Virus record (IMG/VR): IMGVR_UViG_3300030102_006934
Span: 186,001-250,000 of that record
Strand: one strand, 5' to 3'
Length of the DNA: 64,000 nucleotides
The notes below the pieces were generated by a model. The model ran no database searches. It was given only the letters and a program-made list of their open reading frames with translations, and had not been told where the DNA came from. This document shows, one piece after another, positions 1,514 to 28,148 of the stretch. A program made the position numbers and the translations under genes. Numbering within the stretch: the first letter of the stretch is position 1; every line of letters begins with the position of its first letter.

Positions 1514-3154
1514 ATGTCAGGAATTTTTAATACAAGACCTAGGTTTCAAGATAGAGATATGAAACAAATGAGTGGTGACACTATGACACTTTCTGGTGAC
1601 ACCATAATCACAGGTAATTTAGCGTATAATAATGGCGCTACTATTGGTTATGTTTTAACAGCTATAGACACTAATGGTAATGTTGGTTGGTCACCATTAT
1701 CATCGGTAACACCAGGTATTTTTTGGACTTCTGGTTCAACTAACTTAAGTAATATAATTGCTGACAATGGTACTGGTACGGATGCTACAGGTCAGTTTGC
1801 GGTCTCTTGGGGTAAGGGTAATTTGTCTAGTGGATTTCTTTCTACCTCCATGGGTCAAGATAATTTAGCTTCTGGACCTACTTCTTTAGCTCAAGGTAGG
1901 GATACTATAGCTTCTGGTTTTTATTCACATTCACAAGGTTCTCTAACTAAGGCTAGTGGTGATAGTTCTCACGCGGAAGGTGATAATACTTTAGCTAGTG
2001 GTGGTAGTTCTCACGCGGAAGGTGATAATACTTTAGCTAGTGGTCAAGCATCACATGCTGAAGGTAATGGTTCAATCGCAGATGGTGAGGCATCACACGC
2101 AGAAGGTAGTGGTTCAACAGCTAGTGGTCCAGGATCACATGCTGAAGGTACATTGACTTTCTCCAAAGGTAGTTATTCTCACGCAGAAGGTATGTCCACA
2201 ACTGCAGCGACCCAATACTCACATTCAGAAGGTTTCACCACTTTAGCTACTGGTGAATCTTCTCATGCGGAAGGGGATGGTACTGTATCATCTGGTCAAG
2301 CATCACACGCTGAAGGTGTGGATACTCAAACCAATTCAAATTATTCCCACTCAGAAGGTGATGGTACTGAAACTAATGGTTTAGGTTCTCACACAGAAGG
2401 ACTTTCTACCGTAACCTATGGTAATTATGCACACGCAGAAGGGAGTGGTACTAGAGCAGGTATAAGTACTACTGTTGGTATAGCTTCACACGCTAGTGGC
2501 CTAGGAACCATAGCTTATGAGGATTATCAAACCGTTATGGGTAGATATAATACGACTGGTAATACAAATCAGTACTTAGTTGTGGGTAGAGGTACTTCTT
2601 CAGCGGCTAGAGCTAACGCTTTTAGGATTGACTCAGCTGGTGAAATATATGGTGCTGGAGCTACTTACAATTCTGGGGCTGATTACGCTGAATATTTTGA
2701 ATCTGTAGATGGTTCTTCCATTCCTTTTGGGACAGTTGTTGAATTAGACAATGGTAAAATTAAAGAATGTGTTGACCCAAATAACGCTATTGGTGTTGTT
2801 TCTTCTAAACCTTCAATCGTTGGTAACTGTGAAGATGGTACTTCTGATGAGTGGGTTGGTAAATATATAAAAGATGTTTGGGGCAATTACATATATGAAG
2901 ATTACGAGTACGATGTTGATGTGTATGTTGGTGAAAACGGAGAAGAGGTATTCGTAACAAAAGAGGGTAAAAGAAGAGTTTTAAATAAAGATTTTAACCC
3001 ATCGACACCTTACCAAACTAGAAAGGAAAGGGATGAGTGGAATGTAGTTGGGTTATTAGGTCAAATAAGAATTTTAAAGAATCAACAAATACCATCTAGG
3101 TGGATAAAAATTAAAGATATTAACAATGATATAGCTATTTATCTTGTTAGATAA
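1514..3154 (+). CDS. Trimeric fibre/adhesin with 14-aa SHAEG beta-roll repeats and C-terminal Peptidase_G2-like intramolecular chaperone
   Basis: About 13 tandem 14-aa SHAEG repeats; GADYAEYFES...EWNVVGLLGQI typical of the G2 autocleaving chaperone. ATG 1514 preferred over TTG 1496. Confidence 0.75.
   Translation: MSGIFNTRPRFQDRDMKQMSGDTMTLSGDTIITGNLAYNNGATIGYVLTAIDTNGNVGWSPLSSVTPGIFWTSGSTNLSNIIADNGTGTDATGQFAVSWGKGNLSSGFLSTSMGQDNLASGPTSLAQGRDTIASGFYSHSQGSLTKASGDSSHAEGDNTLASGGSSHAEGDNTLASGQASHAEGNGSIADGEASHAEGSGSTASGPGSHAEGTLTFSKGSYSHAEGMSTTAATQYSHSEGFTTLATGESSHAEGDGTVSSGQASHAEGVDTQTNSNYSHSEGDGTETNGLGSHTEGLSTVTYGNYAHAEGSGTRAGISTTVGIASHASGLGTIAYEDYQTVMGRYNTTGNTNQYLVVGRGTSSAARANAFRIDSAGEIYGAGATYNSGADYAEYFESVDGSSIPFGTVVELDNGKIKECVDPNNAIGVVSSKPSIVGNCEDGTSDEWVGKYIKDVWGNYIYEDYEYDVDVYVGENGEEVFVTKEGKRRVLNKDFNPSTPYQTRKERDEWNVVGLLGQIRILKNQQIPSRWIKIKDINNDIAIYLVR
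1790..2520 (+). repeat. 42-nt (14-aa) coding tandem repeat, SHAEG
   Basis: Periodic tc(t/a)ca(c/t)gc.gaaggt; near-exact 42-nt duplication at about 1952-2045. Confidence 0.9.
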
Positions 3155-3163
3155 AATAATGAT

Positions 3164-5809
3164 ATGGGAATAAGTAGTTACTATTTCAAAAATTTAGAAG
3201 GTAGGATAATACATAATAATTATTGGGATGCTCACATTACGTCTGATAATGAAGGTAGGTGTTTAAATTACGCTACTAGTAAAAAAAATATTTCTAATAA
3301 AGAGGTTGTATCAAATGACTTGGTTCTTTGGTTAGACGTTAATAACACAAATACTACCACCAATGGAGATTCACTTACATCTTTAGTTACATGGGATGAG
3401 GCGATAATCAAACCTTGTTCTGGTTTTACCACCTGTGACTTTGGCTTAACTGGTGTTGATAATGGTAGGTATGATAAACTATCTGGTATTACTGTTAGTT
3501 TTACCACAGCCGATACTAAAGTTATTCTATACCCTGTTACTGGTTATACAGTAAATGATACTACTTCTGTAGGTACCAAAGGAAAGTATGATTATCCATG
3601 GACTTATATAACTAATACAACTACTAACCAAAATTCTGGTACTTATTGTACTGAAAAAGATGATTCTGGTAAAACTTGTAATGTAGGTAACGTTATTTGT
3701 TTAGATGGTGGTTTTTATCAAGGATTTTTTAAACTAGACTTTGAAGACCCTAACCCTATAGAAGTTACCGCTACCACTACTGAATGTGATAAAGAAGTTA
3801 TCATTAATGAATATGTGGAAGTAGACCCAGACGCCACAAAATACGATTTAATACCAACTAACTTTAATATATCTAACAATGATTGTAGTACTGGTACAGG
3901 TGGTTGGACAATGGAGACTTGGGTGAAGTGGGATAATAGTTCTTGTTCTGGTTTAACAACAAATAATTTAAATAATAATTTTAGTGGTAATACTGGATTT
4001 TTCTTTTACATAGGTACTAGAGCTGAAAATAAATTTAGAAATGTTTTTTCTGGTGAAACAGGTTTATACACTTGTGATGGTATCATCCCACTTTCTCCAG
4101 ATGGGAAAGAACCTATTATATCTAATGAGGGTCAGGATTGGTTTAGTTTAAGTAATTTTAATTTTATTAATAATGATTGTTGTAATCCTTGTAGTGCGGA
4201 TACTGTTACAACAACCGCAACAACTTACTGTGATGAATTATCCGAAAATGCTTTAGGTCTTAGGATAAAACCAGATGGTCGTATAGGTTATAGAAAAATG
4301 ACTGTATCTGGTTATGAGTATTGGTGTGATGATGATGGAAATGAAATAGATGGTTGTTTACTAGACGTAAATGGTAATATAACTGGTTCGACAAATGGTG
4401 ATTGTTCTTATAGTAGTAATGGTAATAAAAGTTTTTTTATGACTGGCACCACAATGGAAGAGGGTTATTCTAAATACCCTGTTGTTTTAAGTGGTGATAA
4501 TTGGACACACATTACTGTTACTTGGAATCAGAATAGCGTTAAAAATAATTTACCAGCTGGAACTTTAAGGTTTTGGGTTAATGGTAGGATGGTTTATAGA
4601 GTAGATAATTTCATTGGTTTACAATTAAGGGCTTTAAATGAGTATAGTTCTAAACAGTTAGGGGTACCTTATAATATTTCATGGGGTGGTGGTTCTCAGG
4701 GATTATTAGAGTCACAAACTTTTGGTGGCCCAGACCCTAAAGACCAAAATTTAGATATAGCAAAATATTTTGCTGGTACTTTCGATGGGGAATTATCTCA
4801 ACTAAGATTTTATCAAAGGCCTTTAGATTTATTAGAAATAAGAAACAACATGTATGTAGATTCTAATAGATATTGTGTGAGAGAAACTTTTGGTGGTAGT
4901 TTAATTGTACAACCAGCCTTGGTGACTTACGGTGGTGTTTGTGTGGATGGTGAATTAATAACTAGTGATACATTGGGTGTTTCTGTTGACTTAACAGCTA
5001 TTTTAAGTCCTGGTTCGATTAATGTACAATATATTGCTAAATTAAATAAAGAACTTAAAGAAGACCTTACATACAATTTTGATTTTAATTTAGGGGTGGT
5101 AAGTGGTTCCCCCATAAATGTTGAAGGTATTGAAATAGTAATACCTAAAGGTAGTATTTCCGCTACCACACAGACTTCTATAGAAGAGGATTATGAAAGA
5201 ATAACTGATGAGTACAGTATTACTAGAGCACAACACACGTCTTTACAAAAAATAAAAGTAAATAGAAAGGATATTGTTGAACACTTAAAAACACCTAAAC
5301 CAAGAACTATCTTTGGTTGTACTGATTCTGAGGCTACTAATTACAATCCATTAGCAGTAGTAGATGATGGTTCTTGTAATTATGTGGTAGTTAGAGGTTG
5401 TACTAATCCAGACGCCAACAATTATAACCCTAATGCTACCGTAGATGATGGTTCTTGTACTTTCACCCCTACACCACCAGTGGTAAGTAACATTTATTAT
5501 GGTAAACTATTAGACGCAACATTTGACACATCTTCTTTAGGTGATTTAACAATTAAAAACAGTTTAAACGCGGTTAGTACTTATATAGGTATTGGTGAAG
5601 GTAATGGGTATGGTTATATTCTAATACCACAATCAATGCAACAACCATCGTTGTTTAGGAATAGTAATGAAGGGTGTGTAGGTTTTGCTATACCAATGAT
5701 AGATATGGGAGATATTTCTCTAACCATTGATAAGGAAGAAACTATTTATAAAATATACAGAACATTTGTCTCTACCCATTCAAACATTGATGTGTGGTTG
5801 TGTGATTAA
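3164..5809 (+). CDS. Cys-rich virion protein with LamG/ConA-like domain and two GCTD-NYNP-DDGSC repeats
   Basis: WTMETWVK, WTHITVTW, LRFWVNG and FDGELSQLRFYQRPL are LamG-like strands; repeats at 5315-5458. Confidence 0.65.
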   Translation: MGISSYYFKNLEGRIIHNNYWDAHITSDNEGRCLNYATSKKNISNKEVVSNDLVLWLDVNNTNTTTNGDSLTSLVTWDEAIIKPCSGFTTCDFGLTGVDNGRYDKLSGITVSFTTADTKVILYPVTGYTVNDTTSVGTKGKYDYPWTYITNTTTNQNSGTYCTEKDDSGKTCNVGNVICLDGGFYQGFFKLDFEDPNPIEVTATTTECDKEVIINEYVEVDPDATKYDLIPTNFNISNNDCSTGTGGWTMETWVKWDNSSCSGLTTNNLNNNFSGNTGFFFYIGTRAENKFRNVFSGETGLYTCDGIIPLSPDGKEPIISNEGQDWFSLSNFNFINNDCCNPCSADTVTTTATTYCDELSENALGLRIKPDGRIGYRKMTVSGYEYWCDDDGNEIDGCLLDVNGNITGSTNGDCSYSSNGNKSFFMTGTTMEEGYSKYPVVLSGDNWTHITVTWNQNSVKNNLPAGTLRFWVNGRMVYRVDNFIGLQLRALNEYSSKQLGVPYNISWGGGSQGLLESQTFGGPDPKDQNLDIAKYFAGTFDGELSQLRFYQRPLDLLEIRNNMYVDSNRYCVRETFGGSLIVQPALVTYGGVCVDGELITSDTLGVSVDLTAILSPGSINVQYIAKLNKELKEDLTYNFDFNLGVVSGSPINVEGIEIVIPKGSISATTQTSIEEDYERITDEYSITRAQHTSLQKIKVNRKDIVEHLKTPKPRTIFGCTDSEATNYNPLAVVDDGSCNYVVVRGCTNPDANNYNPNATVDDGSCTFTPTPPVVSNIYYGKLLDATFDTSSLGDLTIKNSLNAVSTYIGIGEGNGYGYILIPQSMQQPSLFRNSNEGCVGFAIPMIDMGDISLTIDKEETIYKIYRTFVSTHSNIDVWLCD

Positions 5810-6612: not shown

Positions 6613-6885
6613 TTTTTTTCATATTTTTTAGTCTTTTACTAAAAACCTACCTATTTATATAAAAAGAATGGAGTTAAACCATTCGAATATTAATATCAAA
6701 TATATAATATTTCCAATTTAAATTTATATTAAAATCTAGTGGGTAGTTTTGTTTTAACTTCAGAAATACCCAACATCAAATATTTTTATTAATCAACAAA
6801 ATTAAGATTTGAATAACAAATAAAAATCTATATTAGATTTTTAACACAAAAGAGTGTTTAATAATTTGTTAAAAAAAAAATAATT

Positions 6886-9800
6886 ATGGCAAATACTAAA
6901 ATAGTATTAAATAGACAGTCAGATTTAATTTTAAACAACGCTAAAATCGTTGATCCTTCAGGAATCGTAAAAGGAGATTTACCTGGATTAGTAGATGATT
7001 TAGCAAACTTAAACGCAGCAGACCTTACTGAAGCATCTTTTAGAGTAGCTAAAGATAACTCTTTAGAGGCGAAGATTGATTCTGATGTATCTTCTGCTAG
7101 GCAACAACTGAATTCAGCTAGAGAAGCTGGAGACAATTCATTAGAGGCTAAGATTAATGCTGATGTATCCACTGAGAAAGCTGCGAGAGAAGCTGGAGAC
7201 TTATCATTAACTACAAAAGTTGATGCTGATGTAGACGCTGAGAAATCTGCGAGAAAATCTGCAGACTTATCATTAGAAACTAAAGTAAATGTTGATATCT
7301 CTACTGAGAAATTAGCTAGAGAAACTGATGTATCCAATGAGAAAGCTGCTAGAGAAGCTGGAGACTTATCATTAACTACAAAAGTTGATGCTGATGTATC
7401 CACTGAGAAAGCTGCTAGAGAAGCTGCGGACTTATCATTAACAACTTTGGTTGAAACTGAGATGTCTAATGAGGTTGCTGCGAGAGAAGCTGGAGACTTA
7501 TCATTAACTACAAAAGTTGATGCTGATGTATCTAGTGAAAAATCAGAAAGAGAAGCAGCTGTTACAGCTGAAGCATCTGCTAGAGTAGCGGGTGACACTC
7601 TATTACAATCAAACATCGACACTTTTGAGTCAAGACATGACAGTGAAATGTCGTCTGAGATTTCAGCTAGAGAAGCTGCTGACCTTGCGGAAGCATCATC
7701 TAGATTAGCTGCAGATACAATTTTACAGTCTAACCTTGATACTGAAGAGGCTGAACGTCTTGCTGATGTTTCAACACTTCAGTTGAACATTGACAATGAG
7801 TCTAGTAGAGCTCAAGTACAAGAGGTTGCTAACGCTGATGCTATCGCAGCTGAAACATCTAATAGAATTGTAGATGTTAACGCTGAGGAAGCTAGAGCAA
7901 TTGCTGCTGAAGGTTCTTTAGATACTAAACTAGGTGTTGAAGAAAACGCTAGAATAGCTGGTGATGCTAACTTACAGTCTAACATCGATGTTGAGAAAGG
8001 TAGAATTGACGCTATCTTAAGTGCTTCAACTGCTGATGCTGATTCATTCGCTGAAATCGTTCAATTAATCAACGCTGTTGATACTGAGAATGACAACGCA
8101 TTTGCATCGTATGTATTATCAAATGACGCGGCATTATCTACCGCTATCGCTAACAGTGAGGACGCTGATGAGGAAATAGAATCATCACTTTCAAGTGAGG
8201 TTGCTAGAGCTGAAGCTGCTGAGTCTTCATTAGACGTAGCTTTAGCTGGTGAGGCATCTGCTAGATTAGCTGCTGACCAAGCACATGACGCAGCAATTTC
8301 ACAAGAGATTGTTGATAGAACTGCTGGTGACCAAGCTTTACAAAACAGTTTAAACAACGAAATCTCTGATAGAGTTGTTGCTGACCAAACACAAGCTGCT
8401 AACCTATCAACTGAGGTTGCTAGAGCTGAAGCTGCTGAGTCTTCATTAGACACAGCGTTAGTTAACGAAGTATCTTCAAGGATTGCTGATGTTAACGCTG
8501 AGGAAGCTAGAGCAATTGCTGCTGAAGGTTCTTTAGTTATTAAGATAGATTCAGATATCGCATCTGAAGCATCTACTAGATTAGCTGCTGATATTTCTTT
8601 AACAACTAAAGTTGATACTGAGATGTCATCTGAAGCTTCTTCTAGAGTAGCTGGAGACAATTCATTAGAAGCTAAGATTGATTCTGATATGTCATCTGAA
8701 ACTTCTTCTAGAGTAGCTGGAGACAATTCATTAGAAGCTAAGATTGATTCTGATATGTCTACTGAGAAGTTAGCTAGAGAAACTGCTGATTCTGACGAAG
8801 CTGCAGCTAGAGTAGCTGGGGACAATTCATTAGAAGCTAAAGTTAACACTGATATCTCTACTGAGAAGTTAGCTAGAGAAACTGCTGATTCTTCATTAAC
8901 GACTAAGATTGATACAGATATGTCAAACGAAGTTGTAGCTAGAGAAGCTGCTGATTCTTCATTAACGACTAAGATTGATGTGGATATGTCAAACGAAGTT
9001 GTAGCTAGAGAAGCTGCTGATTCTACCGAAGCTGCGGCTAGAGTAGCTGGAGACAATTCATTAGAGGCTAAGATTGACGCCGATATTTCTACTGAGAAAT
9101 TAGCTAGAGAAACTGCGGACAATTCATTAGAGGCTAAGATTGATACAGATATGTCAAACGAAGTTGTAGCTAGAGAAACTGCTGACCAATCATTGGTAAC
9201 TAAGATTGACACAGATATGTCAAACGAAGTTGTAGCTAGAGAAGCTGGAGATAACTCTTTAGAAGCTAAGATTGACGCTGATATGTCAGACGAGGTTGTA
9301 GCTAGAGAAGCTGGAGACAATTCATTAGAGGCTAAGATTGATGTGAGTATATCAAACGAAGTTGTAGCTAGAGAAACTGCTGATTCTTCATTAACAACTA
9401 AGATTGATTCTGATATCTCTACTGAGAAAGCTGCTAGAGAAACTGCTGATTCTTCATTAGTAACTAAGATTGACACAGATATGTCAAACGAAGTTGTAGC
9501 TAGAGAAGCAGAAGATAAAGCTTTAGAGGCTAAGATTGATTCTGATATCTCTACTGAGAAAGCTGCTAGAGAAGCTGCTGACTTATCATTAACAACTAAG
9601 ATTGACACTGATATGTCAAACGAAGTTGTGGATAGAAAAGCAGAAGATGACGCTTTAGAGGCTAAGATTAATGTTGAGAAAGGTAGAATTGACACTATCT
9701 TAGATGGATCTACGGTTGATTTAGATCAATTTAAGGAAGTTGTTAGCTTCGTAGAAGAAATTGATTTAGAAAACGATGCTAATTTATTAGCAGCTGTTAA

Positions 9801-11505
9801 TACAATCAATGATTCGATTACTGATGAAAGAAACAAAAGAACAACGGCAGATAACGCTTTAGAGTCTAAGATTAATTCTGATATCTCTACTGAAAAGTTA
9901 GCTAGAGAAACTGCTGACCAATCATTAGTAACTAAGATTGATTCTGATATCTCTACTGAGAAATTAGCTAGAGAAACTGCGGACAATTCATTAGAAGCTA
10001 AGATTGATTCTGATATCTCTACTGAGAAATTAGCTAGAGAAACTGCGGACAATTCATTAGTAACTAAGATTGACACAGATATGTCAAACGAAGTTGTAGC
10101 TAGAGAAACATTAGAAAAAACTTTAGATGCTAAGATTGATTCTGAGATCTCTACTGAGAAATTAGCTAGAGAAACTGCTGACCAATCACTAACAACTAAG
10201 ATTGATACAGATATGTCAAACGAAGTTGTAGCTAGAGAAGCATTAGAAAAGAACTTAGAGTCTAAGATTGACACTGAGATCTCTACTGAGAGATTAGCTA
10301 GAGAAACTGCTGATGCTGAATTAAATGGTAAAATCACTGATATAATCTCTAACACAGATGTAACAGCTTTAGATTCATTTAGTGAAGTAAACAACCACTT
10401 GAATAGACTAGAAGATAACCACTTACAATCAATCTCTGTAAATACAGTATCTAATGGTAATGGTGATCTAATAGGTTTATATTCTCAAGCTTGTTTAACT
10501 GGATTTAAACAAGGTACAGTACAAGTCTTTTTAAATGGTCAACTTCTTACTGAAGGGGTAGACTGGCAAGAGGCTGTGGCTTACACTGACTTAAATAGCT
10601 TACCTGGAGAAGGTGTAGCTGTAGGAGCTGTAAAATTACTGTATACTGGTAATGTAAACGATTCTCATGTTATCTACGCTGTAAAACATTCTGATGAAAT
10701 AGTGTATGGTGGAACACCAGTAGCTGAAGAACCTAAAAAGGATGAAGGTCCAGGTTATGAAACACCAGCAGGTCCAGGTTATGGAGCACCAGTAGAAAAA
10801 AATCCCACACCGGGAGCGGGAGCTGAAGTACCTAAAGGTCCAGGTTATGGAACAATAGTTGAGGAACCTAAAAAGGATGAAGGTCTTGGTTATGGATACG
10901 GATATGGATACGGATACGGATACGATTCAGTAAAACCTAAACTTTCAGCGGAAGAGGAAGTAAATCAGTGGATGTCAACGTCAATTAATGATTATAGTAT
11001 GAAACATGGTACTCTTCAAAGAGAACCTAACGCTAAAACTATGTTTGACGGAATCATCGATGCGGTAAACCAATCTAAAGGTTATGAAAACGCCAAAAGA
11101 TGGTTTGGATTCGTAGGTGTTGTACATGAAGCACTATCTGAAGGGTTAGAGCTAGGATACGATTGGGACACTTTCTTTGATTTATTCGCTGAAGCACTAG
11201 GACACCAGTGGAACGGTAGTTGGAGTAACCCAGGTAAGGCGTTAGCCGCGGATTTCTTTAATGTTGTTAACAATAAGGAAATTTTCAGTCCAAAATACGT
11301 GGAACAAGTTGGATCGAAGTGGAATGAGCAAGAGTTAATGAAAACAAATGCACAAAGCTACTTCATGATGACTCAACCTACTACTGGATGGTTTACTCAG
11401 GAAGGTCTAGATTACTGGAAACCAGGTTCGTTATATAAAACTCATATACAAAATACAGAAAGTACATGGGTTGACTTACCGATTCCATTTGATACTAAAG
11501 GATAA
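6886..11505 (+). CDS. Very long coiled-coil fibre protein (11/22-aa repeats) with C-terminal globular domains
   Basis: 22-aa units such as IDTDMSNEVVAREAADSSLTTK; three neck-like interruptions; VFLNGQLLTEGVDW module; GPGY/GY linker; aromatic tip domain. Confidence 0.8.
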   Translation: MANTKIVLNRQSDLILNNAKIVDPSGIVKGDLPGLVDDLANLNAADLTEASFRVAKDNSLEAKIDSDVSSARQQLNSAREAGDNSLEAKINADVSTEKAAREAGDLSLTTKVDADVDAEKSARKSADLSLETKVNVDISTEKLARETDVSNEKAAREAGDLSLTTKVDADVSTEKAAREAADLSLTTLVETEMSNEVAAREAGDLSLTTKVDADVSSEKSEREAAVTAEASARVAGDTLLQSNIDTFESRHDSEMSSEISAREAADLAEASSRLAADTILQSNLDTEEAERLADVSTLQLNIDNESSRAQVQEVANADAIAAETSNRIVDVNAEEARAIAAEGSLDTKLGVEENARIAGDANLQSNIDVEKGRIDAILSASTADADSFAEIVQLINAVDTENDNAFASYVLSNDAALSTAIANSEDADEEIESSLSSEVARAEAAESSLDVALAGEASARLAADQAHDAAISQEIVDRTAGDQALQNSLNNEISDRVVADQTQAANLSTEVARAEAAESSLDTALVNEVSSRIADVNAEEARAIAAEGSLVIKIDSDIASEASTRLAADISLTTKVDTEMSSEASSRVAGDNSLEAKIDSDMSSETSSRVAGDNSLEAKIDSDMSTEKLARETADSDEAAARVAGDNSLEAKVNTDISTEKLARETADSSLTTKIDTDMSNEVVAREAADSSLTTKIDVDMSNEVVAREAADSTEAAARVAGDNSLEAKIDADISTEKLARETADNSLEAKIDTDMSNEVVARETADQSLVTKIDTDMSNEVVAREAGDNSLEAKIDADMSDEVVAREAGDNSLEAKIDVSISNEVVARETADSSLTTKIDSDISTEKAARETADSSLVTKIDTDMSNEVVAREAEDKALEAKIDSDISTEKAAREAADLSLTTKIDTDMSNEVVDRKAEDDALEAKINVEKGRIDTILDGSTVDLDQFKEVVSFVEEIDLENDANLLAAVNTINDSITDERNKRTTADNALESKINSDISTEKLARETADQSLVTKIDSDISTEKLARETADNSLEAKIDSDISTEKLARETADNSLVTKIDTDMSNEVVARETLEKTLDAKIDSEISTEKLARETADQSLTTKIDTDMSNEVVAREALEKNLESKIDTEISTERLARETADAELNGKITDIISNTDVTALDSFSEVNNHLNRLEDNHLQSISVNTVSNGNGDLIGLYSQACLTGFKQGTVQVFLNGQLLTEGVDWQEAVAYTDLNSLPGEGVAVGAVKLLYTGNVNDSHVIYAVKHSDEIVYGGTPVAEEPKKDEGPGYETPAGPGYGAPVEKNPTPGAGAEVPKGPGYGTIVEEPKKDEGLGYGYGYGYGYGYDSVKPKLSAEEEVNQWMSTSINDYSMKHGTLQREPNAKTMFDGIIDAVNQSKGYENAKRWFGFVGVVHEALSEGLELGYDWDTFFDLFAEALGHQWNGSWSNPGKALAADFFNVVNNKEIFSPKYVEQVGSKWNEQELMKTNAQSYFMMTQPTTGWFTQEGLDYWKPGSLYKTHIQNTESTWVDLPIPFDTKG
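7040..10320 (+). repeat. 66-nt (22-aa) degenerate coding repeat array
   Basis: Recurrent gctagagaa(a/g)ctg...tcatta...ctaagattga units. Confidence 0.9.
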
Positions 11506-11561
11506 GGTAAATGAAACGTTAGTTTTTAATGTAATTATATTGTATAATTTACAACAAATGG

Positions 11562-11594: not shown

Positions 11595-11639
11595 ACCATT
11601 ACTAATTTAATAAATATTTATTGTTAAACACTTATAGAT

Positions 11640-14751: not shown

Positions 14752-14774
14752 TTTTTAAATATTATTTTATTTGG

Positions 14775-15326: not shown

Positions 15327-15401
15327 GTCTATAAATATTTTAATAAAACTGAATATTCATTTTTTTTTAGATATTTATAGTATATATAAAAACAAATTAA
15401 A

Positions 15402-17502: not shown

Positions 17503-17506
17503 AAAA

Positions 17507-18412
17507 ATGGAGTTACCCAAAAAGATACATTTAACATGTCCTAATAAGAATAAAATAGAAAACCCTATATGGGTGGAGTGTTTAAATAAGTATTATGAAC
17601 TTTATGATGACTATGAAATAATTTTATATGATGACTCTGATATCTATGACATAATTGATGAGTATTACCCACTATTTTTAGAAAAAATTAAAAAAATAAG
17701 TGTCGGAGCTGTTTTATCAGATTTATTTAGATATCTAATACTTTATTTAGAAGGTGGTATTTATTCTGATTTAGATTGTTTACCACTAAAAAAAATAGAC
17801 CCTTTACTAGACGTAAATTATAGATACTTTCATGGAGATGAAAATAGGGGTAATAATTTATTTGTTTATGAAAATAATGAAAACATCATAGATAGTAGGT
17901 GGGATTTTTGTAGTAATGTATGTGATAATAGTGTTGAGTTAGATTATGACCATTATTTAGGGATGAAAACATTAAAATGTTTGGGTCATAATATAGACAT
18001 TAAAAATACATCGACTATTTTATCTTATGAAGTACATAATGATTGGCATCAAGTTGATCAAAATTTACTAAAAAATCAAAAAATTTGTTATAAAAATTTA
18101 GGAATAGCACAATGGTTTATTATAACAGAACCTAAACAAGAAATATTTTTAAAAATGTTTATGTCCTGCATGGATAATTTAGATGACCTAGTAGATATAA
18201 AAAAAAACATGGTTAACGTTAATAGAGATGATTATCATTACAATATTATATCTAAAACTGGTCCACTAGCTTTCACTAAAATGGTGGTTGATAATATGCA
18301 TGATAAAATTAAAATATTACCTTCTGATTTTTTTTGTGGGGGTTCTTGGAAGAAAGTTCCTTTTACAAAAAACTCTTACATATCACATAAATTCACATCT
18401 AGTTGGTTATAA
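17507..18412 (+). CDS. GT32/OCH1-like glycosyltransferase
   Basis: LPKKIH, SDLFRY..EGGIYSDLD, AQW, TGP, HKFTSSW. Confidence 0.85.
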   Translation: MELPKKIHLTCPNKNKIENPIWVECLNKYYELYDDYEIILYDDSDIYDIIDEYYPLFLEKIKKISVGAVLSDLFRYLILYLEGGIYSDLDCLPLKKIDPLLDVNYRYFHGDENRGNNLFVYENNENIIDSRWDFCSNVCDNSVELDYDHYLGMKTLKCLGHNIDIKNTSTILSYEVHNDWHQVDQNLLKNQKICYKNLGIAQWFIITEPKQEIFLKMFMSCMDNLDDLVDIKKNMVNVNRDDYHYNIISKTGPLAFTKMVVDNMHDKIKILPSDFFCGGSWKKVPFTKNSYISHKFTSSWL

Positions 18413-18427
18413 CACTTAATAAAAAAA

Positions 18428-19126
18428 ATGAAAAAAGAAGTGGGTAATAGGGTTATAATTGTTGGTGATAGTCACGCTTTACATGGTTGGGTTGATTTCC
18501 AATCTGATACAAATAAACACACTTATGATGAAAGTAGTGGGTTAGACTTAAATGAACAGTGGGTGGATAATGTATTTATAAAATCACATTCTTTCGCTGG
18601 TACTTTATGTTATACTTTTAATAAAGAAGATTTTGATAGGTTTGATATTCGTAAGTTTGCTATATCTGACGGTGATATTTTAATTTTTAGTTTTGGTGAG
18701 ATAGATTGTAGGTCTCACATACACAAATATATTAATAATGAAAAATCTTACAAAGAAATTATTACACCTATTGTTACTAATTATTTTTCCACTATAAAAA
18801 GAGAAGTAAATAAATTAAATAAAAATTTAAAGAAGATTTGTGTATATAATATTATACCACCGACAGAAAAAAAATATTTAGATATTGCTGGTCATGTGTC
18901 TTGTATTGGTTCGGATGAAGAGAGGAAAAATTACTACCAATACTTTAATAAATTAATTAAAAATAAATGTTTAGAAAATAATTTTATTTTTATTGATGTT
19001 TATAAAGAACATTCAAATGTGAAAGGTTATTTGGATAGGAAATATTCTGATGGTGGTGATTTTGGTGATTTTCACCTAAAAAAATCAGAACATATTTTTA
19101 ATTTTTTAAAAAATAATATACTTTAA
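18428..19126 (+). CDS. SGNH/GDSL hydrolase-like protein (possible sugar acyl esterase/transferase)
   Basis: IVGDSH block I, FGEIDCR, C-terminal D-F-H. Confidence 0.7.
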   Translation: MKKEVGNRVIIVGDSHALHGWVDFQSDTNKHTYDESSGLDLNEQWVDNVFIKSHSFAGTLCYTFNKEDFDRFDIRKFAISDGDILIFSFGEIDCRSHIHKYINNEKSYKEIITPIVTNYFSTIKREVNKLNKNLKKICVYNIIPPTEKKYLDIAGHVSCIGSDEERKNYYQYFNKLIKNKCLENNFIFIDVYKEHSNVKGYLDRKYSDGGDFGDFHLKKSEHIFNFLKNNIL

Positions 19127-19136
19127 ATAAAAAAAA

Positions 19137-19568
19137 ATGAGAAAAGTAGTTATAGTTAGTGGGTACTTTAACCCAATTCATAAAGGACATTTAGAACTTT
19201 TAAGAAAGGCAAAAGAATTTAGTGATGATTATGTCATAGCCATAGTTAATTCAGACTTACAGAGAGAACTTAAGGGTTCAAAAGAATTCCAAGAAGAGAA
19301 CGAAAGACTAGAAATAGTTAGTTCAATAAAATACGTTGGCCACGCTTTAATTTCTATTGATAAAGATAGAACACAAATAGAAACTTTAAAACATATTCAC
19401 AATGAATATGGTAAGGTATGGGAACTTTATTTCGCGAATGGTGGGGACCAAGATAATAATTCAATACCAGAAAGCTCAATTTGTGGTGAACTAGGGATAA
19501 ATCTTTTAGATGGCCTTGGTGATAAAATACAATCTAGTAGTTGGTTACTAAAAAATAAAAACAAATAA
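19137..19568 (+). CDS. Cytidylyltransferase-family nucleotidyltransferase (RfaE/TagD-like)
   Basis: SGYFNPIHKGH (HxGH), FANGGD, KIQSSS. Confidence 0.85.
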   Translation: MRKVVIVSGYFNPIHKGHLELLRKAKEFSDDYVIAIVNSDLQRELKGSKEFQEENERLEIVSSIKYVGHALISIDKDRTQIETLKHIHNEYGKVWELYFANGGDQDNNSIPESSICGELGINLLDGLGDKIQSSSWLLKNKNK

Positions 19569-19569
19569 A

Positions 19570-19914
19570 ATGGAACAAAACGAGAGTAGACCTTGGGGTA
19601 AGTATGAGATACTTCTATCAAGTGATAATTGTAAAGTAAAAAAAATAACAGTAAGTCCAGGTGGTAGACTTAGTTATCAATACCACCATAAAAGAAGTGA
19701 AGTTTGGACAATAACTTCTGGTGTTGCCACAATAACTTTAGATGATGATGTTCAAGACTACAATTATGGAGAAACGGTTTTAATTCCTCAAGGAACAAAA
19801 CATAGGGTTGAAAATAGGGGAGAAGAAGATTTAAACTTCATAGAAGTTCAGTATGGGTCTTACTTTGGTGAGGACGACATAGTTAGAATTGAAGATGATT
19901 ATGATAGAAAATAA
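19570..19914 (+). CDS. Type II mannose-6-phosphate isomerase cupin (ManC C-terminal-like)
   Basis: RPWG, LSYQYHHKRSEVW, KHRVEN, IEVQYGSYFGEDDIVRIEDDY. Confidence 0.9.
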   Translation: MEQNESRPWGKYEILLSSDNCKVKKITVSPGGRLSYQYHHKRSEVWTITSGVATITLDDDVQDYNYGETVLIPQGTKHRVENRGEEDLNFIEVQYGSYFGEDDIVRIEDDYDRK

Positions 19915-24606: not shown

Positions 24607-25025
24607 TGAATAAGAATTGTGGTCCTGATATTATAAAATATTTTATTGTAGAAAGTGGTTCTACAAATTCTAACTTTACTACTGTAAGTTACACATCAAC
24701 CAATATATTAAACAATGATTTGGTAACCGTTCTACCAACCCCAAACCCAAATGAATATTACCAAATCTTAGGAGTTTTTAAATATGTATATGGTACTACA
24801 CCCTATATTGTTGGTGGTATGGATTTTTTAAGGTTAAATAATGTTGCTGGTGGTACGATGGTTACCGCTCCAATACCAACGGGTAGTAGTAATGAGGTAA
24901 TAACAGGTTTTAATGCTGTAACAGAATTAGGTCAACCTTTAACTATGGATTTAAGGATTGGTGTAATTACTGGTGGAGATGGTTTTGTAAATGTTGATGT
25001 GACTTATGAATTGTTAACTTTTTAA
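24606..25025 (+). CDS. Hypothetical virion protein
   Basis: Translationally coupled (TAATG overlap); beta-rich. Confidence 0.55.
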   Translation: MNKNCGPDIIKYFIVESGSTNSNFTTVSYTSTNILNNDLVTVLPTPNPNEYYQILGVFKYVYGTTPYIVGGMDFLRLNNVAGGTMVTAPIPTGSSNEVITGFNAVTELGQPLTMDLRIGVITGGDGFVNVDVTYELLTF

Positions 25026-25192: not shown

Positions 25193-25205
25193 ATGGCTTT
25201 TCTCT

Positions 25206-25266: not shown

Positions 25267-25331
25267 ATTTTTTGAGTTTTTATCTAATATTTATTATTAG
25301 AAAATAACATAAAAAGAAAAAACATTTTTCA

Positions 25332-28148
25332 ATGGCAGACAATAAAGTATATGTATCACCAGGTGTGTTTACATCAGAAAAAGATTTAACATTTGTAGCA
25401 CAACAAGTTGGTGTTACAACATTAGGTATAGTTGGTGAGACTGTTAAAGGTCCAGCTTTCGAACCTATTTTTATAACAAATTATGAAGAGTATACCACAA
25501 TATTCGGTGGACTAAATCCTAGAATATTTTTAAATGGTAAACCTCAGTTTGAAGCTTCTTATATAGCTAAACAGTATTTAACAGAATCTAATCAATTATT
25601 TGTAACTAGAATATTAGGTTTAACTGGTTATGATGCTGGAGCGGCTTGGGCAATTGTAGCTGATGCTGATTACGACCCTAGTACAATAGTAACTGCTTCT
25701 ACTGGTACGTTCACAGCTTCTTTCTCAGGAGCGGGAGCTACATTAGAGTTCTTTGGATTTGCTGGAGCGGGAGCTACTGAAGCCGAAAACTTAATAGACG
25801 ATAACGCTGGTATCAACGTAAATCCTTACACAGGTGTTGGTACTGATTTTTCATTACCAGGTGGTGGTGAGATATCATTCACTAAAAATGTTGGTGGTGG
25901 TTTTGATGGTTCTGCTATTGTAGGTGAGGTTACATCAGCTAACTCAACAGGACTTACTGGTACAATAAGTGGTGTAACAAGTACATTTACGGCGGACGCT
26001 TATGATTGTGAGAACAAAGTATTAGCGATGGTAAGGTCTAGAGCTGACGTTATTAGTGACATTCTTTATTGGAGAACGGACCAATCAGCAACTGGTTTAG
26101 TGGGTGACTTTAGTTTAACATCAACCGATCCTTTAGGTAATTTTACTCTATCAGCTTCTAGTTCTGGATTTACTAGTGTAGAAACTTATGAAGCTTCTTT
26201 AGATTCCACTAAAAGAAATTATTTACCTAGGGTTATTGGTCAGAATTGTTCTGATAGAGATACTAGAGTATGGGTGGAAGAAATTTACCCTAACATGTTA
26301 TCTGATTTGATTACTAACGGTAAAATTTTAGGTTTAAAATCACAATTATTACATTTTGATAGTTTTGATAATTATCAACAACAATGGCAAACACCTGAGA
26401 CTCCTTGGATTGTTTCAGAATTACGAGGTAACCAAGTAGATAAACTATTTAAGTTTATTTCTATTTCAGACGGTAGTGGAGCAAATAAAGAAATAAAAAT
26501 ATCAATACAAAGAATTAATTTAGAAGATAAGACTTTTGATGTTGTTGTTAGAGAATTCTACGATTTAGATTCTAGACCACAAATATTAGAAAGATTCTCT
26601 AGATGTTCGTTAGACCCTAACGATAATTCATTTATCGGTGAAAGAATAGGTACAGCAGATGGTGAGTATCCACTTAGAAGTAGATTTATCATGTTAGTAC
26701 TTAATCCTGACGCACCAACAGACGCTTTCCCATCAGGATTTGAGGGGTATAGAGTTAGGGATTATGTAACTAGTGATTCTTTAACTACGGCTTTAGCACC
26801 AGAATTAGAGTACAAAAGTTCTTATGACTTAACTAATGATAAATTAAGAAAAGTTTATTTAGGTATATCTAACACTGTAGGAATCGACCAAGACATGTTT
26901 GATTGGAAGGGTTATACTAATGATTCATCACCAAATCCATGGACAGCCACTACTAAAGGTTTCCATATGGACAGTGGAGCTACTGTAGCTGGTGAGTTTA
27001 TTGTTGGTTGTTGTCCATTTACTGACGCTTTAGCGATACAAGATACTGTTTATGAAAGTGTTAACGCTAGAAAATTCACATTAGTACCTTACTTAGGTTT
27101 TGATGGTTGGAATTGCCATAGAGAGTCTGGTACTACACCAAGAACAAACACTGATAGATATAGAATAGGTAAGGCTGGTTTTACAGCTGGTTTAACATCA
27201 TCTGAATTTAGTCAATTAAGTAATACTATTGGTACTTCAGATTACTACGCTTATTTAGAGGCTATACAAACTTTCCAAAATCCAGAGAGTGTTAATATAA
27301 ATGTGTTTACAACACCAGGTATAGATTATCAATCTAACTTAAGTTTAGTTGAGGAGACTATTGATATGATAGAGGAAGATAGAGCTGACTCAATCTATTT
27401 AGTTACTTCTCCAGACGGAGCTGTTCAAGAAGATTCTTCATTTGACTTAAATGGTTTAGGTTTTAACACAATAGATAAGTTATCACCAGATGCTATAGTA
27501 GACATCTTAAGTGACGCTGATTTAGATTCTAACTATACAGCCACTTACTGGCCTTGGATTCAAATGAAAGATAGTGAGAACTCTGTAAACATATTTTTAC
27601 CACCAACACTAGAAGTGGTAAAAGATATAGCACTTACGGATAATATATCTTTCCCATGGTACGCAACAGCAGGTTATACAAGAGGTAGAACTGTAGCTAT
27701 TCAACCAAGAACTAAATTAACTGAATCACAAAGAGATACACTTTATGAAGGTAGAATTAACCCAATGGCGTTCTATTCTGATGAAGGTACTTTAATTTGG
27801 GGTAACAAGAACCTACAAGTTGCTGATTCAGCATTAGATAGATTAAATATTAGAAGATTGTTACTACAAACTAGAAAATTAATTTCAGCAGTAGCGGTAA
27901 GATTGTTATTTGAACAAAACGACCAAATAGTTAGAAATCAATTCTTAAACTTAGTAAATCCAATTTTAGATAATATTAGAAGAGAAAGAGGTTTATCAGA
28001 CTTTAGAGTTCAACTTTCTAGTGACCCTGAAGAAATTGATAGAAATGAAATGAGAGGTAAGATATTCTTAAAACCAATTCCTACCTTAGAATTTATAATC
28101 TTAGAGTTTAATGTAACTCCTACTGGAGCGTCATTCGATGATATCTAA
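25332..28148 (+). CDS. Contractile tail sheath protein (gp18-like)
   Basis: VSPGVFTSEKD, KGPAFEP, YWPW, PWYATAGYTRG, RDTLYEGRINP, LNIRRLL, LLFEQND. Confidence 0.95.
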   Translation: MADNKVYVSPGVFTSEKDLTFVAQQVGVTTLGIVGETVKGPAFEPIFITNYEEYTTIFGGLNPRIFLNGKPQFEASYIAKQYLTESNQLFVTRILGLTGYDAGAAWAIVADADYDPSTIVTASTGTFTASFSGAGATLEFFGFAGAGATEAENLIDDNAGINVNPYTGVGTDFSLPGGGEISFTKNVGGGFDGSAIVGEVTSANSTGLTGTISGVTSTFTADAYDCENKVLAMVRSRADVISDILYWRTDQSATGLVGDFSLTSTDPLGNFTLSASSSGFTSVETYEASLDSTKRNYLPRVIGQNCSDRDTRVWVEEIYPNMLSDLITNGKILGLKSQLLHFDSFDNYQQQWQTPETPWIVSELRGNQVDKLFKFISISDGSGANKEIKISIQRINLEDKTFDVVVREFYDLDSRPQILERFSRCSLDPNDNSFIGERIGTADGEYPLRSRFIMLVLNPDAPTDAFPSGFEGYRVRDYVTSDSLTTALAPELEYKSSYDLTNDKLRKVYLGISNTVGIDQDMFDWKGYTNDSSPNPWTATTKGFHMDSGATVAGEFIVGCCPFTDALAIQDTVYESVNARKFTLVPYLGFDGWNCHRESGTTPRTNTDRYRIGKAGFTAGLTSSEFSQLSNTIGTSDYYAYLEAIQTFQNPESVNINVFTTPGIDYQSNLSLVEETIDMIEEDRADSIYLVTSPDGAVQEDSSFDLNGLGFNTIDKLSPDAIVDILSDADLDSNYTATYWPWIQMKDSENSVNIFLPPTLEVVKDIALTDNISFPWYATAGYTRGRTVAIQPRTKLTESQRDTLYEGRINPMAFYSDEGTLIWGNKNLQVADSALDRLNIRRLLLQTRKLISAVAVRLLFEQNDQIVRNQFLNLVNPILDNIRRERGLSDFRVQLSSDPEEIDRNEMRGKIFLKPIPTLEFIILEFNVTPTGASFDDI

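What the first reader, a model, noticed from the sequence alone, without database searches (positions are those of the whole stretch)
1514..28148. [S/T]-G-x-T motif enriched in several external virion proteins but absent from the hub: candidate glycosylation sequon
Hand counts (approximate) of [ST]G dipeptides that form [ST]-G-x-T: LamG protein 3164-5809, 9 of ~18 (SGFT, SGIT, TGYT, SGKT, SGLT, SGNT, SGET, TGST, TGTT); SHAEG fibre 6 of ~21; sheath 5 of ~14; 24606 protein has SGST. By contrast: 4098-aa hub 0 of ~50, 1768-aa protein 1 of ~14, 790-aa cargo protein 0. The 1539-aa fibre also has none. Inference: a short motif repeated across non-homologous surface proteins suggests an enzyme recognition signal, plausibly for the neighbouring GT locus. 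It differs from the Bacteroidota D-[ST]-[AILVMT] O-glycosylation sequon.
Basis: partly seen in the sequence, partly recalled or inferred. Interest (0 to 1): 0.78.

Follow-up and report, generated by a model that had tools for sequence, protein, structure and literature searches.

The report
Conserved Ser/Thr-Gly-x-Thr motif on phage fibres
A four-residue motif, [Ser/Thr]-Gly-x-Thr, really is over-represented and conserved in the outward-facing tail and neck proteins of a whole clade of uncultured giant marine phages, but sequence data alone cannot tell whether it is a building element of these fibres or a sugar-attachment signal, and it is not tied to the neighbouring sugar-transferase genes.

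Summary
Within the window alone, enrichment (20 observed, about 5 expected) survives local-composition shuffles but is only borderline after look-elsewhere correction. Homologues settle it. The LamG family has 12.2 motifs per protein against 1.45 expected (120 proteins), the fibre family is 4.2-fold enriched, the sheath 3.3-fold, and about 34 further fibre-like families 3-8-fold. Only S/T at position 0 and T at +3 are favoured. T4 shows none of this and other aquatic myoviruses only 1.5-2-fold. Hub "absence" is not significant.

The link to the neighbouring GT island fails. The island occurs only in the closest relatives, co-occurs with a motif-free coiled-coil fibre, and motif density is the same with or without nearby GT genes. 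However, the clade has a conserved double-GT2 gene heading variable glycan loci. The window's own phage carries one just upstream, including a NeuB-type synthase.

Best reading (0.40): an inherited architectural element of these β-rich modules. Live rival (0.30): an O-glycosylation acceptor motif. Mass spectrometry or co-expression is needed.

The parts
1496..3154 (+). Fibre gene (552 aa from TTG 1496; public gene aa from ATG 1514). YadA/Hep_Hag-type SHAEG head repeats plus a phi29-gp12-type C-terminal auto-chaperone. 6 motifs.
   Evidence: Pfam Peptidase_G2 E 7e-34. PHROG pre-neck appendage. PDB 3gqh, 6qz9, 7o23. Family is 4.18x enriched, 611 against 146.
1571..1582 (+). Motif SGDT (fibre residue 26)
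1592..1603 (+). Motif SGDT (fibre residue 33)
1730..1741 (+). Motif SGST (fibre residue 79)
   Evidence: coordinates by arithmetic
1871..1882 (+). Motif SGPT (fibre residue 126, inside the head-repeat region)
2108..2119 (+). Motif SGST (fibre residue 205, inside the SHAEG repeats)
2555..2566 (+). Motif TGNT (fibre residue 354, start of the auto-chaperone domain)
3164..5809 (+). 881-aa Cys-rich LamG/ConA-like lectin-fold protein. 9 motifs, all within residues 86-430.
   Evidence: Pfam Laminin_G_3. Foldseek matches LamG, pentraxin and CBM40 folds. 120 homologues average 12.2 motifs against 1.45 expected.
3419..3430 (+). Motif SGFT (LamG residue 86). G and T invariant in 119 homologues.
3482..3493 (+). 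Motif SGIT (residue 107). Kept in 95 of 107 homologues; held by 90% of the <35%-identity group.
3539..3550 (+). Motif TGYT (residue 126). Kept in 109 of 120.
3665..3676 (+). Motif SGKT (residue 168). Lineage-specific, in an insertion.
3947..3958 (+). Motif SGLT (residue 262). Kept in 37 of 116.
3983..3994 (+). Motif SGNT (residue 274). Kept in 56 of 120.
4049..4060 (+). Motif SGET (residue 296). S-G-E invariant; +3 is T in 68 and S in 52.
4382..4393 (+). Motif TGST (residue 407). Lineage-specific.
4442..4453 (+). Motif TGTT (residue 427). T-G invariant; +3 is T in 85, V in 22, K in 12.
24654..24665 (+). Single SGST in the 139-aa protein 24606-25025. Not significant (1 against 0.34 expected).
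25332..28148 (+). T4 gp18-like tail sheath (938 aa) with clade-specific insertion domains. 5 motifs.
   Evidence: Pfam Phage_sheath_1 and 1C. tblastn to gp18 homologues. Family is 3.29x enriched, 352 against 107.
25947..25958 (+). Motif TGLT (sheath residue 206, variable insertion domain)
25968..25979 (+). Motif SGVT (residue 213)
26163..26174 (+). Motif SGFT (residue 278)
26973..26984 (+). Motif SGAT (residue 548). Conserved in 38 of 39 orthologues, inside an insertion absent from T4 gp18 and from the cyanophage and Flavobacterium-phage sheaths.
27126..27137 (+). Motif SGTT (residue 599). Created by a 4-residue insertion seen in only 2 of the 39 aligned sheaths (the window's own and one other).
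6886..11505 (+). 1539-aa A/E/D/S-rich coiled-coil fibre. No motif, only 4 [ST]G. It is the partner that travels with the GT island.
11640..19914 (.). Neighbouring GT island: GT1 (11640-12758 +), DXD-type GT (12755-13573 -), DUF2827 (13561-14751 -), small DnaJ-like (14775-15326 -), 15402-16034 +, three DXD-type GTs (16031-18412 +), 18428-19126 +, cytidylyltransferase (19137-19568 +), mannose-6-P-isomerase-type cupin (19570-19914 +). GC 26-28% against 32-38% in the flanks.
   Evidence: Pfam, NCBIfam, composition, distribution
363..1511 (+). gp13-like neck adaptor (382 aa). Highly conserved and motif-free (family 0 against 9.2 expected).
   Evidence: phrog_211, PF26809 Phage_T4_gp13 in the public gene call
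51155..63451 (+). 4098-aa 'hub' protein. 0 motifs in 51 [ST]G (expected 3.6); depletion not significant.
45483..50789 (+). 1768-aa protein. 1 motif (expected 1.5); family ratio 0.37.
34949..37321 (+). 790-aa protein. 0 motifs (expected 0.41); family 1 against 4.7.

Best explanation
SHOWN. [ST]-G-x-T, usually preceded by a hydrophobic residue and followed by Y/F/H then N/Q, is a selectively maintained sequence element. It occurs in the outward-facing, β-rich virion proteins of a large clade of uncultured giant T4-like marine or aquatic phages: neck or tail fibres, a lectin-fold LamG protein, and the inserted outer domains of the sheath. It does not depend on the GT island next to the fibre genes.

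INFERRED (my commitment, about 0.4). The motif is mainly an architectural element that these modules inherit, not an enzyme signal.
- The hydrophobic residue at -1 anchors the chain.
- Ser/Thr-Gly makes the transition from loop into a β-strand.
- The Thr at +3 is the first outward-facing strand residue.
- The two hydroxyls are needed for local hydrogen bonding.

The high counts then arise in three ways. First, sites are conserved at fixed columns (LamG family, sheath insertion). Second, one copy per unit is multiplied when repeat units duplicate (36-aa, 12-aa and PTR-linked repeats). Third, there is a general 2-3-fold propensity for this tetrapeptide in Thr/Gly-rich fibre proteins, which is also seen outside the clade.
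For: - Most sites are inherited columns. In 120 LamG homologues G is invariant at five sites, and Ser/Thr at position 0 and Thr/Ser at +3 are nearly so. 63% of motifs in homologues below 35% identity sit at columns shared with close homologues, against 9% by chance.
- Repeat arrays carry exactly one motif per unit, with V, G and T as conserved as the other framework residues. Spacing peaks at 36-37 residues and there is no short-range clustering.
- Motifs at new positions in distant homologues (about 3.6 per protein against 1.3 expected, 2.8-fold) match the generic excess outside the clade: T4 gp37 6 against 2.1, Flavobacterium-phage and cyanophage fibres 1.5-2-fold.
- The flanks look like core-anchored β structure. 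Position -1 is hydrophobic in 59-64% of cases against a 32% background, charged residues there are at 0.2x, and P and R are excluded at x.
- Two AlphaFold models, both of modest or low confidence, put [ST]G in coil and x-T at the start of a strand: in several LamG sites (86, 126, 168 clearly) and in four of the five repeat units.
- The motif tracks β-rich composition, not externality. The external coiled-coil fibre has none.
- There is no correlation with nearby GT genes, and no protein-specific O-glycosyltransferase was identified.
Against: - The fold does not require the motif. Chitinophagales surface proteins with the homologous 36-aa repeat have T-S-V-V at that place (0-0.6x).
- PTR/HxH fibre proteins of Moraxella phage Mcat26 and Bacillus phage G have none.
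- The motif occurs in about 750 unrelated flank contexts.
- In the LamG model it shows no single local conformation (coil, helical turn, mid-strand), and none of the eight confident tight hairpins uses it.
- The clade-level excess (4-8-fold) is well above the generic 1.5-3-fold, and density holds at 24-35% identity.
- Asn/Asp at position 0 and Val/Ile at +3, the usual substitutes in turns and β-strands, are not enriched at all.
- The clade carries large glycan loci.
Confidence: 0.4

Rival explanations
1. O-glycosylation acceptor motif. A phage-encoded cytoplasmic glycosyltransferase recognises Φ-[ST]-G-x-T on fibre, LamG and sheath-surface domains and attaches a sugar to one of the hydroxyls. 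Variable neighbouring enzymes then elaborate the glycan, which in this phage could include a nonulosonic acid. The enzyme would belong to the clade-wide locus headed by the double-GT2 gene, about 9-20 kb upstream of the window. It would not be the island beside the fibres.
For: - Three-way specificity: only S/T at position 0 (4.9x and 4.4x, all others at most 1.15x) and T, then S, at +3 (4.6x and 1.9x).
- Hundreds of unrelated contexts.
- Restricted to outward-facing proteins.
- Absent from T4 and weak in other myoviruses.
- Absent from cellular homologues of the same repeat.
- Density maintained with gains at new positions.
- The double-GT2 gene lies on many of the same contigs, with fucosyltransferase-type GTs, a DegT aminotransferase and an RmlD-like enzyme behind it in L329.
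- In the window's own phage it is followed by a GT2, a PF01973 MptE/Maf-family protein, a PseF-like gene, NeuB (E 3e-49), a pyruvyl transferase and a methyltransferase.
- Maf enzymes O-glycosylate Ser/Thr of flagellin in the cytoplasm. Their sites lie among V, M, I, F, T and G, with no strict sequon (PMC11339370).
Against: - No modification has been observed.
- The PF01973 match only just reaches threshold (34.7 against 34.6 bits), covers only the end of the domain, and its best solved match is an archaeal MptE kinase at E 0.04, not Maf.
- The double-GT2 most resembles polysaccharide synthases (chondroitin and heparosan synthase, SpsA), and PF13712 is reported from lipooligosaccharide loci. 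It sits among replication and nucleotide genes, so DNA or host-surface glycans are equally possible targets.
- No significant avoidance in bystander proteins.
- No correlation with GT genes within 10 kb.
- From my own knowledge, strict linear O-sequons are not known for cytoplasmic bacterial O-GTs.
- True sequons are rarely 4-8-fold enriched or invariant in folded cores.
Confidence: 0.3
2. A recognition element for something other than a glycosyltransferase. Candidates are a fibre-assembly chaperone, another post-translational modification of Ser/Thr, or a shared ligand-contact element of receptor-binding proteins.
For: The same evidence for a linear, clade-specific, context-independent signal applies. 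Fibre proteins of this clade carry intramolecular chaperone domains (Peptidase_G2 and S74). A small DnaJ-like gene travels with the fibre cassette.
Against: No candidate enzyme or chaperone with matching distribution was identified. The sheath is not a chaperone-dependent trimeric fibre. This reading is purely by elimination.
Confidence: 0.12
3. A chance or post hoc pattern: the motif and the three proteins were picked after looking, so the enrichment means nothing.
For: Within the window alone, 20% of shuffled proteomes yield some motif with an equally strong best-three-protein statistic.
Against: Replicated in independent data: 1459 observed against 174.5 expected in 120 LamG homologues, and 37 enriched families in 156 loci. 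Codon usage inside motifs equals general usage, so there is no DNA-level repeat.
Confidence: 0.02

Closest known systems
Bacteroidota general O-glycosylation motif D-[ST]-[AILVMT]
   Same: A three-position Ser/Thr-centred motif shared by many non-homologous surface proteins. The probable host phylum is the same, given Flavobacterium-phage sheath similarity and Chitinophagales homologues.
   Different: The residues differ: no Asp, an obligatory Gly, and Thr at +3. That system works in the periplasm with an oligosaccharyltransferase (own knowledge), whereas phage virions assemble in the cytoplasm. No modification has been shown here.
Maf-type flagellin O-glycosylation with nonulosonic acids
   Same: Cytoplasmic modification of many Ser/Thr on a fibre-forming protein, with sites flanked by V, M, I, F, T and G (PMC11339370). 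The window's phage has NeuB, a PseF-like gene and a PF01973-family protein in a row.
   Different: Maf systems have no strict sequon. The phage protein is 216 aa and matches only the end of the domain at threshold, with no match to the solved Maf. The acceptor is unknown.
Mycobacteriophage virion glycosylation (Freeman et al. 2023, cited in PMC12619734)
   Same: Phage-encoded GTs close to structural genes; decoration of external virion proteins.
   Different: There the glycans sit at the C-termini of capsid and tail-tube subunits. Here the motifs are internal, lie in fibres, LamG and sheath, and no glycan has been demonstrated.
Autotransporter heptosylation (AIDA-I and TibA by the TibC/BAHT family; PMC4358343)
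   Same: A precedent for a repeat element that is both part of a β-solenoid architecture and the acceptor for cytoplasmic O-glycosylation, with one site per repeat.
   Different: It involves a different enzyme family, which I did not search for here. As I recall the literature, recognition there is of a structural motif and not a linear tetrapeptide.
Sequence-signature repeats of phage fibres (T4 gp12/gp34/gp37 repeats; Pfam PTR PF12789; YadA/Hep_Hag head repeats)
   Same: Short conserved residues recurring once per structural unit in trimeric β-rich fibres. The window's fibre matches Hep_Hag/BpaC heads and one relative matches PTR.
   Different: T4 fibres, and the PTR proteins of the Moraxella phage and Bacillus phage G, lack [ST]GxT enrichment. 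Here the same tetrapeptide also recurs in a globular lectin-fold domain and in sheath insertions.

Membership tests
Protein glycosylation sequon (generic) | Motif over-represented in target proteins after composition correction | tested here: met
   20 against about 5 in the window; 3-8-fold in 37 families
Protein glycosylation sequon (generic) | Motif presence or density co-varies with presence of the cognate transferase | tested here: not met
   For the neighbouring island, motif counts are 10.1 with and 11.3 without a GT within 10 kb, and the island is absent from L083/L004. For the clade-wide double-GT2 the test is inconclusive because contigs are partial.
Protein glycosylation sequon (generic) | Covalent sugar on the Ser/Thr of the motif | not testable with these tools
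   Needs mass spectrometry
Protein glycosylation sequon (generic) | Sites solvent-exposed | tested here: inconclusive
   No coordinates are returned. DSSP and pLDDT show sites mostly in coil or at strand entry, in lower-confidence regions.
Bacteroidota D-[ST]-[AILVMT] O-glycosylation | Asp before the Ser/Thr and an aliphatic residue or Thr after it | tested here: not met
   Position -1 is hydrophobic with Asp at 0.2x, and +1 is always Gly
Maf-type nonulosonic-acid protein glycosylation | Maf_flag10 (PF01973) transferase | tested here: inconclusive
   34.7 bits against a cut-off of 34.6, covering model positions 115-169 of 171 only. Best PDB match is archaeal MptE at E 0.04.
Maf-type nonulosonic-acid protein glycosylation | Nonulosonic-acid synthase and CMP-activating enzyme in the same locus | tested here: met
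   NeuB E 2.7e-58 (Pfam) and 3.5e-49 (NCBIfam), below the equivalog cut-off. The PseF-like gene is weak, 38 bits.
Structural repeat signature of a fibre fold | One copy at a fixed position in each repeat unit | tested here: met
   36-aa and 12-aa repeats; spacing peak at 36-37
Structural repeat signature of a fibre fold | Kept in all homologues of the same repeat fold | tested here: not met
   Chitinophagales homologues have T-S-V-V; P0191 has TGAS, DGIS and TGIG
Structural repeat signature of a fibre fold | Same local conformation at every occurrence | tested here: inconclusive
   Strand-entry position in four of the five repeat units (pLDDT 49) and at several LamG sites, but others are helical or mid-strand
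Tight two-residue β-hairpin (G-x turn) | Motif located at tight strand-turn-strand connections | tested here: not met
   None of eight confident tight hairpins uses it; predicted turns in the repeat are at N-G-T-N; no cross-strand hydrophobic correlation
T4 gp18-type contractile sheath (protein 25332-28148) | Phage_sheath_1 and C-terminal domains; similarity to gp18 | tested here: met
ConA-like/LamG lectin fold (protein 3164-5809) | Laminin_G_3 profile and jelly-roll fold | tested here: met
   Pfam 28.3 bits against 27.6; Foldseek matches to LamG, pentraxin and CBM40 at E down to 1e-6

The most novel reading that the evidence does not exclude
[ST]-G-x-T is the first defined O-glycosylation sequon of a bacteriophage. 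A clade of giant marine phages uses a conserved cytoplasmic transferase, with lineage-variable glycan loci that include nonulosonic-acid synthesis in this phage. Together these coat the fibres, a lectin-like receptor protein and the outer sheath surface with sugars, much as giant eukaryotic viruses glycosylate their fibrils.
Probability: 0.3. Interest if true: 0.85.

Novelty: new variant of a known kind. Interest (0 to 1): 0.58.

Why it matters
Short conserved signatures in fibre proteins are common, and virion glycosylation by phage enzymes is known from mycobacteriophages and giant viruses. What is new is a tetrapeptide with exact residue specificity shared by dozens of unrelated outward-facing protein families. 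It occurs across an abundant, uncultured clade of giant marine phages that also carries large, variable glycan loci.

If the motif is an acceptor site, it would give a sequence-readable map of phage surface glycosylation in metagenomes. It would also give a handle for glyco-engineering.

If it is architectural, it marks a fibre-building idiom that structure predictors currently model poorly.

Either way, the analysis gives three concrete results. It separates the motif from the neighbouring GT island. It links that island to a coiled-coil fibre cassette instead. And it locates a second glycan locus containing NeuB just outside the window.

Tried and rejected
1. DNA-level repeat or codon artefact: rejected. 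Motif codons (AGT/TCT, GGT/GGA, ACA/ACT/ACC) mirror general usage.
2. Simple low-complexity or pairwise bias: rejected. [ST]G followed by other residues, and xG.T with other x, sit at about 1x.
3. Tight β-hairpin with a cross-strand Thr pair: rejected.
4. Avoidance of the motif in bystander proteins: not significant.
5. Clustering of motifs into patches: none.
6. Significant depletion in the hub: not supported.
7. Correlation with the neighbouring GT island: absent.
8. Membership of the published 'moraphage' lineage (PMC12619734): could not be verified from the text. It stays a lead only.
9. Cross-phage test in cultured phages: impossible. No curated phage has the double-GT2 or the 36-aa repeat.
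10. Solved homologues of the LamG family: none. The fold search gave only generic lectin jelly-rolls.
11. Direct detection of the double-GT2 on the window's IMG/VR contig by pattern scan failed. It was then found through the public gene call of the same phage.
12. Literature on fibre glycosylation motifs: nothing relevant.

Full report
WHAT THE WINDOW IS. The window is part of a 380-kb IMG/VR contig. The same phage occurs on a 163-kb Tara Oceans marine contig. It is a low-GC (26-38%), distantly T4-like giant myovirus. The sheath carries gp18 domains and its nearest curated relatives are only 28-32% identical.

Gene order at the left end is as follows:
- a gp13-like neck adaptor (363-1511);
- a fibre with YadA/Hep_Hag head repeats and a phi29-gp12-type auto-chaperone (1496-3154);
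- an 881-aa Cys-rich LamG lectin-fold protein (3164-5809);
- a 166-aa protein;
- a 1539-aa coiled-coil fibre (6886-11505).

Next comes a genuine GT island (11640-19914). It holds one GT1, four DXD-type GTs, a DUF2827 protein, a cytidylyltransferase and a mannose-6-P-isomerase-type cupin.

CHECKING THE OBSERVATION. All hand counts are exact. Against composition, the LamG protein has 9 motifs for 1.5 expected, the fibre 6 for 1.5, and the sheath 5 for 1.1. Shuffling within 20-80-residue blocks keeps the combined expectation at about 5 against 20 observed. After [ST]G, Thr is enriched only at offset +3 (20 of 53). Because the motif was chosen after looking, I scanned about 52,700 motifs of similar form using a best-three-proteins statistic. 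20% of shuffled proteomes match the [ST]G.T score, and 1 of 60 matches S-G-x-T. Taken alone, the window is therefore borderline.

REPLICATION. In 120 database homologues of the LamG protein, the motif occurs 1459 times against 174.5 expected, a mean of 12.2 against 1.45. It occupies about a dozen recurrent columns, several with invariant Gly and near-invariant hydroxyls. I clustered all ORFs of 156 related loci without preselection. This gave 37 enriched families (ratio at least 3): LamG 8.05, fibre 4.18, sheath 3.29, and many fibre-like families at 4-8 (PA14, endosialidase-chaperone, PTR, tail-fibre PHROGs). Helicase, neck adaptor, tape-measure-like and other internal families lie at or below expectation. 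In the enriched families only Ser (4.9x) or Thr (4.4x) is favoured at position 0, with every other residue at most 1.15x. Only Thr (4.6x), then Ser (1.9x), is favoured at +3. The extended logo is D/N(-4), Y/F(-2), V/L/M/F(-1), [ST], G, x (not P or R), T, Y/F/H, N/Q. Codon usage excludes a DNA repeat.

CONTROLS OUTSIDE THE CLADE.
- T4: gp34 0 against 2.0, gp12 1 against 1.1, gp18 0 against 0.7, gp37 6 against 2.1.
- A Flavobacterium myovirus and a T4-like cyanophage: fibre-like proteins at 1.5-2x.
- The two curated phages with the closest sheaths: none.
- PTR/HxH fibre proteins of Moraxella phage Mcat26 and Bacillus phage G: none by eye.

There is thus a generic 1.5-3-fold propensity in Thr/Gly-rich fibres, and a clade-specific 4-8-fold excess on top of it.

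THE HUB CLAIM. Zero in 51 [ST]G against 3.6 expected gives p of about 0.025 before any correction. A partial orthologue has 1 against 1.7. Across 29 core non-fibre families the cluster-weighted ratio is 0.62. This is the lowest of 17 motifs tested but lies inside the range of the 16 other control motifs. No avoidance is demonstrated.

THE NEIGHBOURING GT ISLAND. Iterative searches find its genes only on the window's contig, its 98% and 85% relatives, and a few others. The next-best DXD-GT matches are mostly giant-virus MAGs at 33-43%. In relative L083/L004 the whole block from the 166-aa gene through the island is missing, yet the fibre and LamG orthologues keep 7-8 motifs. Two further fibre proteins there carry 12 and 20. 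Island genes co-occur with homologues of the motif-free coiled-coil fibre: 3 of 5 loci against 0 of 71, p=1.4e-4. LamG motif counts do not differ with or without any GT within 10 kb. The DUF2827 plus DnaJ-like pair is 57-68% identical in relatives whose LamG is about 30% identical, which suggests a mobile cassette.

OTHER GLYCAN MACHINERY. A protein with two GT2-type domains (Glyco_tranf_2_5 plus Glycos_transf_2) lies 6-9 kb from the LamG gene in 24 loci. It is found on many of the same contigs as the motif-rich genes, with at least 570 relatives in IMG/VR. In L329 it heads a locus with GT25, GT11, GT10, a DegT aminotransferase, an RmlD-like enzyme and a GT2. In the window's own phage it lies about 8.7 kb upstream of the window. 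There it is followed by a GT2, a PF01973 MptE/Maf-family protein (at threshold), a weak PseF-like gene, NeuB, a pyruvyl transferase, a methyltransferase and two more GT-like genes. Maf enzymes glycosylate flagellin Ser/Thr in the cytoplasm at sites surrounded by V, M, I, F, T and G. On the other side, the PF01973 protein's best solved match is an archaeal kinase at E 0.04. The double-GT2 resembles polysaccharide synthases. It sits among PolB, exonuclease and dUTPase genes, so DNA or host-surface glycans are equally plausible targets.

STRUCTURE. The LamG model (pLDDT 67) places 7 of 9 sites in the Thr-rich, irregular N-terminal 300 residues. None of its eight confident tight hairpins uses the motif, and the well-folded C-terminal sandwich has none. 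A five-repeat model (pLDDT 49) puts the hairpin turn at N-G-T-N and the motif at the entry of the first strand in four of the five units; the fifth is unstructured in the model. Hydrophobicity at -1 and +4 rises when Thr is at +3, but cross-strand correlations are nil. The motif is therefore not a tight hairpin. A loop-to-strand element is the best structural description available, and it rests on weak models.

EVOLUTION. LamG motif density holds at 12.2 per protein at 30-40% identity and 7.4 below 30%. 63% of motifs in distant homologues are at shared columns, against 9% by chance. The rest, about 3.6 per protein against 1.3 expected, are at new positions, while several ancestral sites are lost. 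Homologues of the 36-aa repeat in signal-peptide-bearing Chitinophagales proteins have T-S-V-V in its place (0-0.6x), whereas phage-type hits stay at 4.4-5.6x down to the weakest matches. The motif occupies about 750 distinct flank contexts.

WEIGHING THE EXPLANATIONS. Conserved columns, one copy per repeat unit, and a new-site rate equal to the generic fibre propensity together account for most of the numbers without invoking an enzyme. That is why I rank the architectural reading first (0.40). It does not explain why the fold can do without the motif, why the usual turn and strand substitutes are excluded, or why the clade excess is so large. Those points, together with the glycan loci, keep an O-glycosylation acceptor reading alive at about 0.30. 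Another kind of recognition signal gets about 0.12. Chance is excluded. Sequence analysis cannot go further. The decisive data are mass spectrometry after co-expression, coordinates for the motif sites, and GT-loss contrasts in complete genomes.

Noticed in passing
L340:7760-18000 (same phage, about 8.7-19 kb upstream of window position 1): A second, larger glycan locus: double-GT2 (514 aa), GT2, PF01973 MptE/Maf-family protein, PseF-like gene, NeuB-type nonulosonic-acid synthase, polysaccharide pyruvyl transferase, methyltransferase, GT1-like and GT2-like genes. It follows PolB, an exonuclease and a dUTPase-like gene.
   Followed up: partly
window 11640-19914: The GT island has distinctly lower GC (26-28%) than its flanks. 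Outside a few close relatives, its DXD-type GTs are most similar (33-43%) to genes on giant-virus MAG contigs, which suggests recent horizontal acquisition.
   Followed up: partly
window 6886-15326; L144:13777-22346; L161:9359-20686; L164:14-6420; L160:8737-15731: Island GT genes, especially DUF2827 with a small DnaJ-like gene, travel with homologues of the coiled-coil 1539-aa fibre (3 of 5 loci against 0 of 71). DUF2827 is 57-68% identical where LamG is only about 30%, so this looks like a mobile fibre-plus-GT cassette. If the island modifies a virion protein, this motif-free fibre is the obvious candidate.
   Followed up: partly
window 6886-11505: The 1539-aa fibre consists of A/E/D/S-rich coiled-coil-type tandem repeats. 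The long antisense ORFs inside it (6858-7622, 8061-9695 and 9726-10394, minus strand) are probably by-products of the repeats.
   Followed up: no
window 26940-27140: The sheath has a clade-specific insertion around GFHMDSGAT that T4 gp18 and other T4-like sheaths lack. A 4-residue insertion at residue 599, seen in only 2 of the 39 aligned sheaths, creates an extra motif.
   Followed up: yes
P0169, P0175, P0186, P0197 (Chitinophagales MAG proteins): Bacterial surface proteins with a signal peptide share the phage's 36-aa fibre repeat and YadA-type head repeats. This is module sharing between the phage clade and Bacteroidota, consistent with a Bacteroidota host.
   Followed up: partly
window 3164-5809: The LamG protein is unusually Cys-rich. 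Its model resembles sialic-acid-binding CBM40 modules and other lectin jelly-rolls, which is intriguing in a phage that encodes a nonulosonic-acid synthase. The matches are weak (TM 0.1-0.5).
   Followed up: no
window 1496-1514: Start of the fibre gene is ambiguous: TTG at 1496 (552 aa) or ATG at 1514 (546 aa, as in the public gene call). Motif coordinates are unaffected.
   Followed up: yes
window 42594-63451: Three very large consecutive proteins (951, 1768 and 4098 aa) have no Pfam assignment in the parts tested. The 951-aa protein is Gly-rich and tape-measure-like. Their families run at 0.4x of expectation for the motif.
   Followed up: no
L329:12802-17771: In a relative, the locus behind the conserved double-GT2 holds GT25, GT11 and GT10 (fucosyltransferase-type) genes, a DegT aminotransferase and an RmlD-like enzyme instead of the NeuB module. 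Glycan chemistry therefore varies between clade members.
   Followed up: partly
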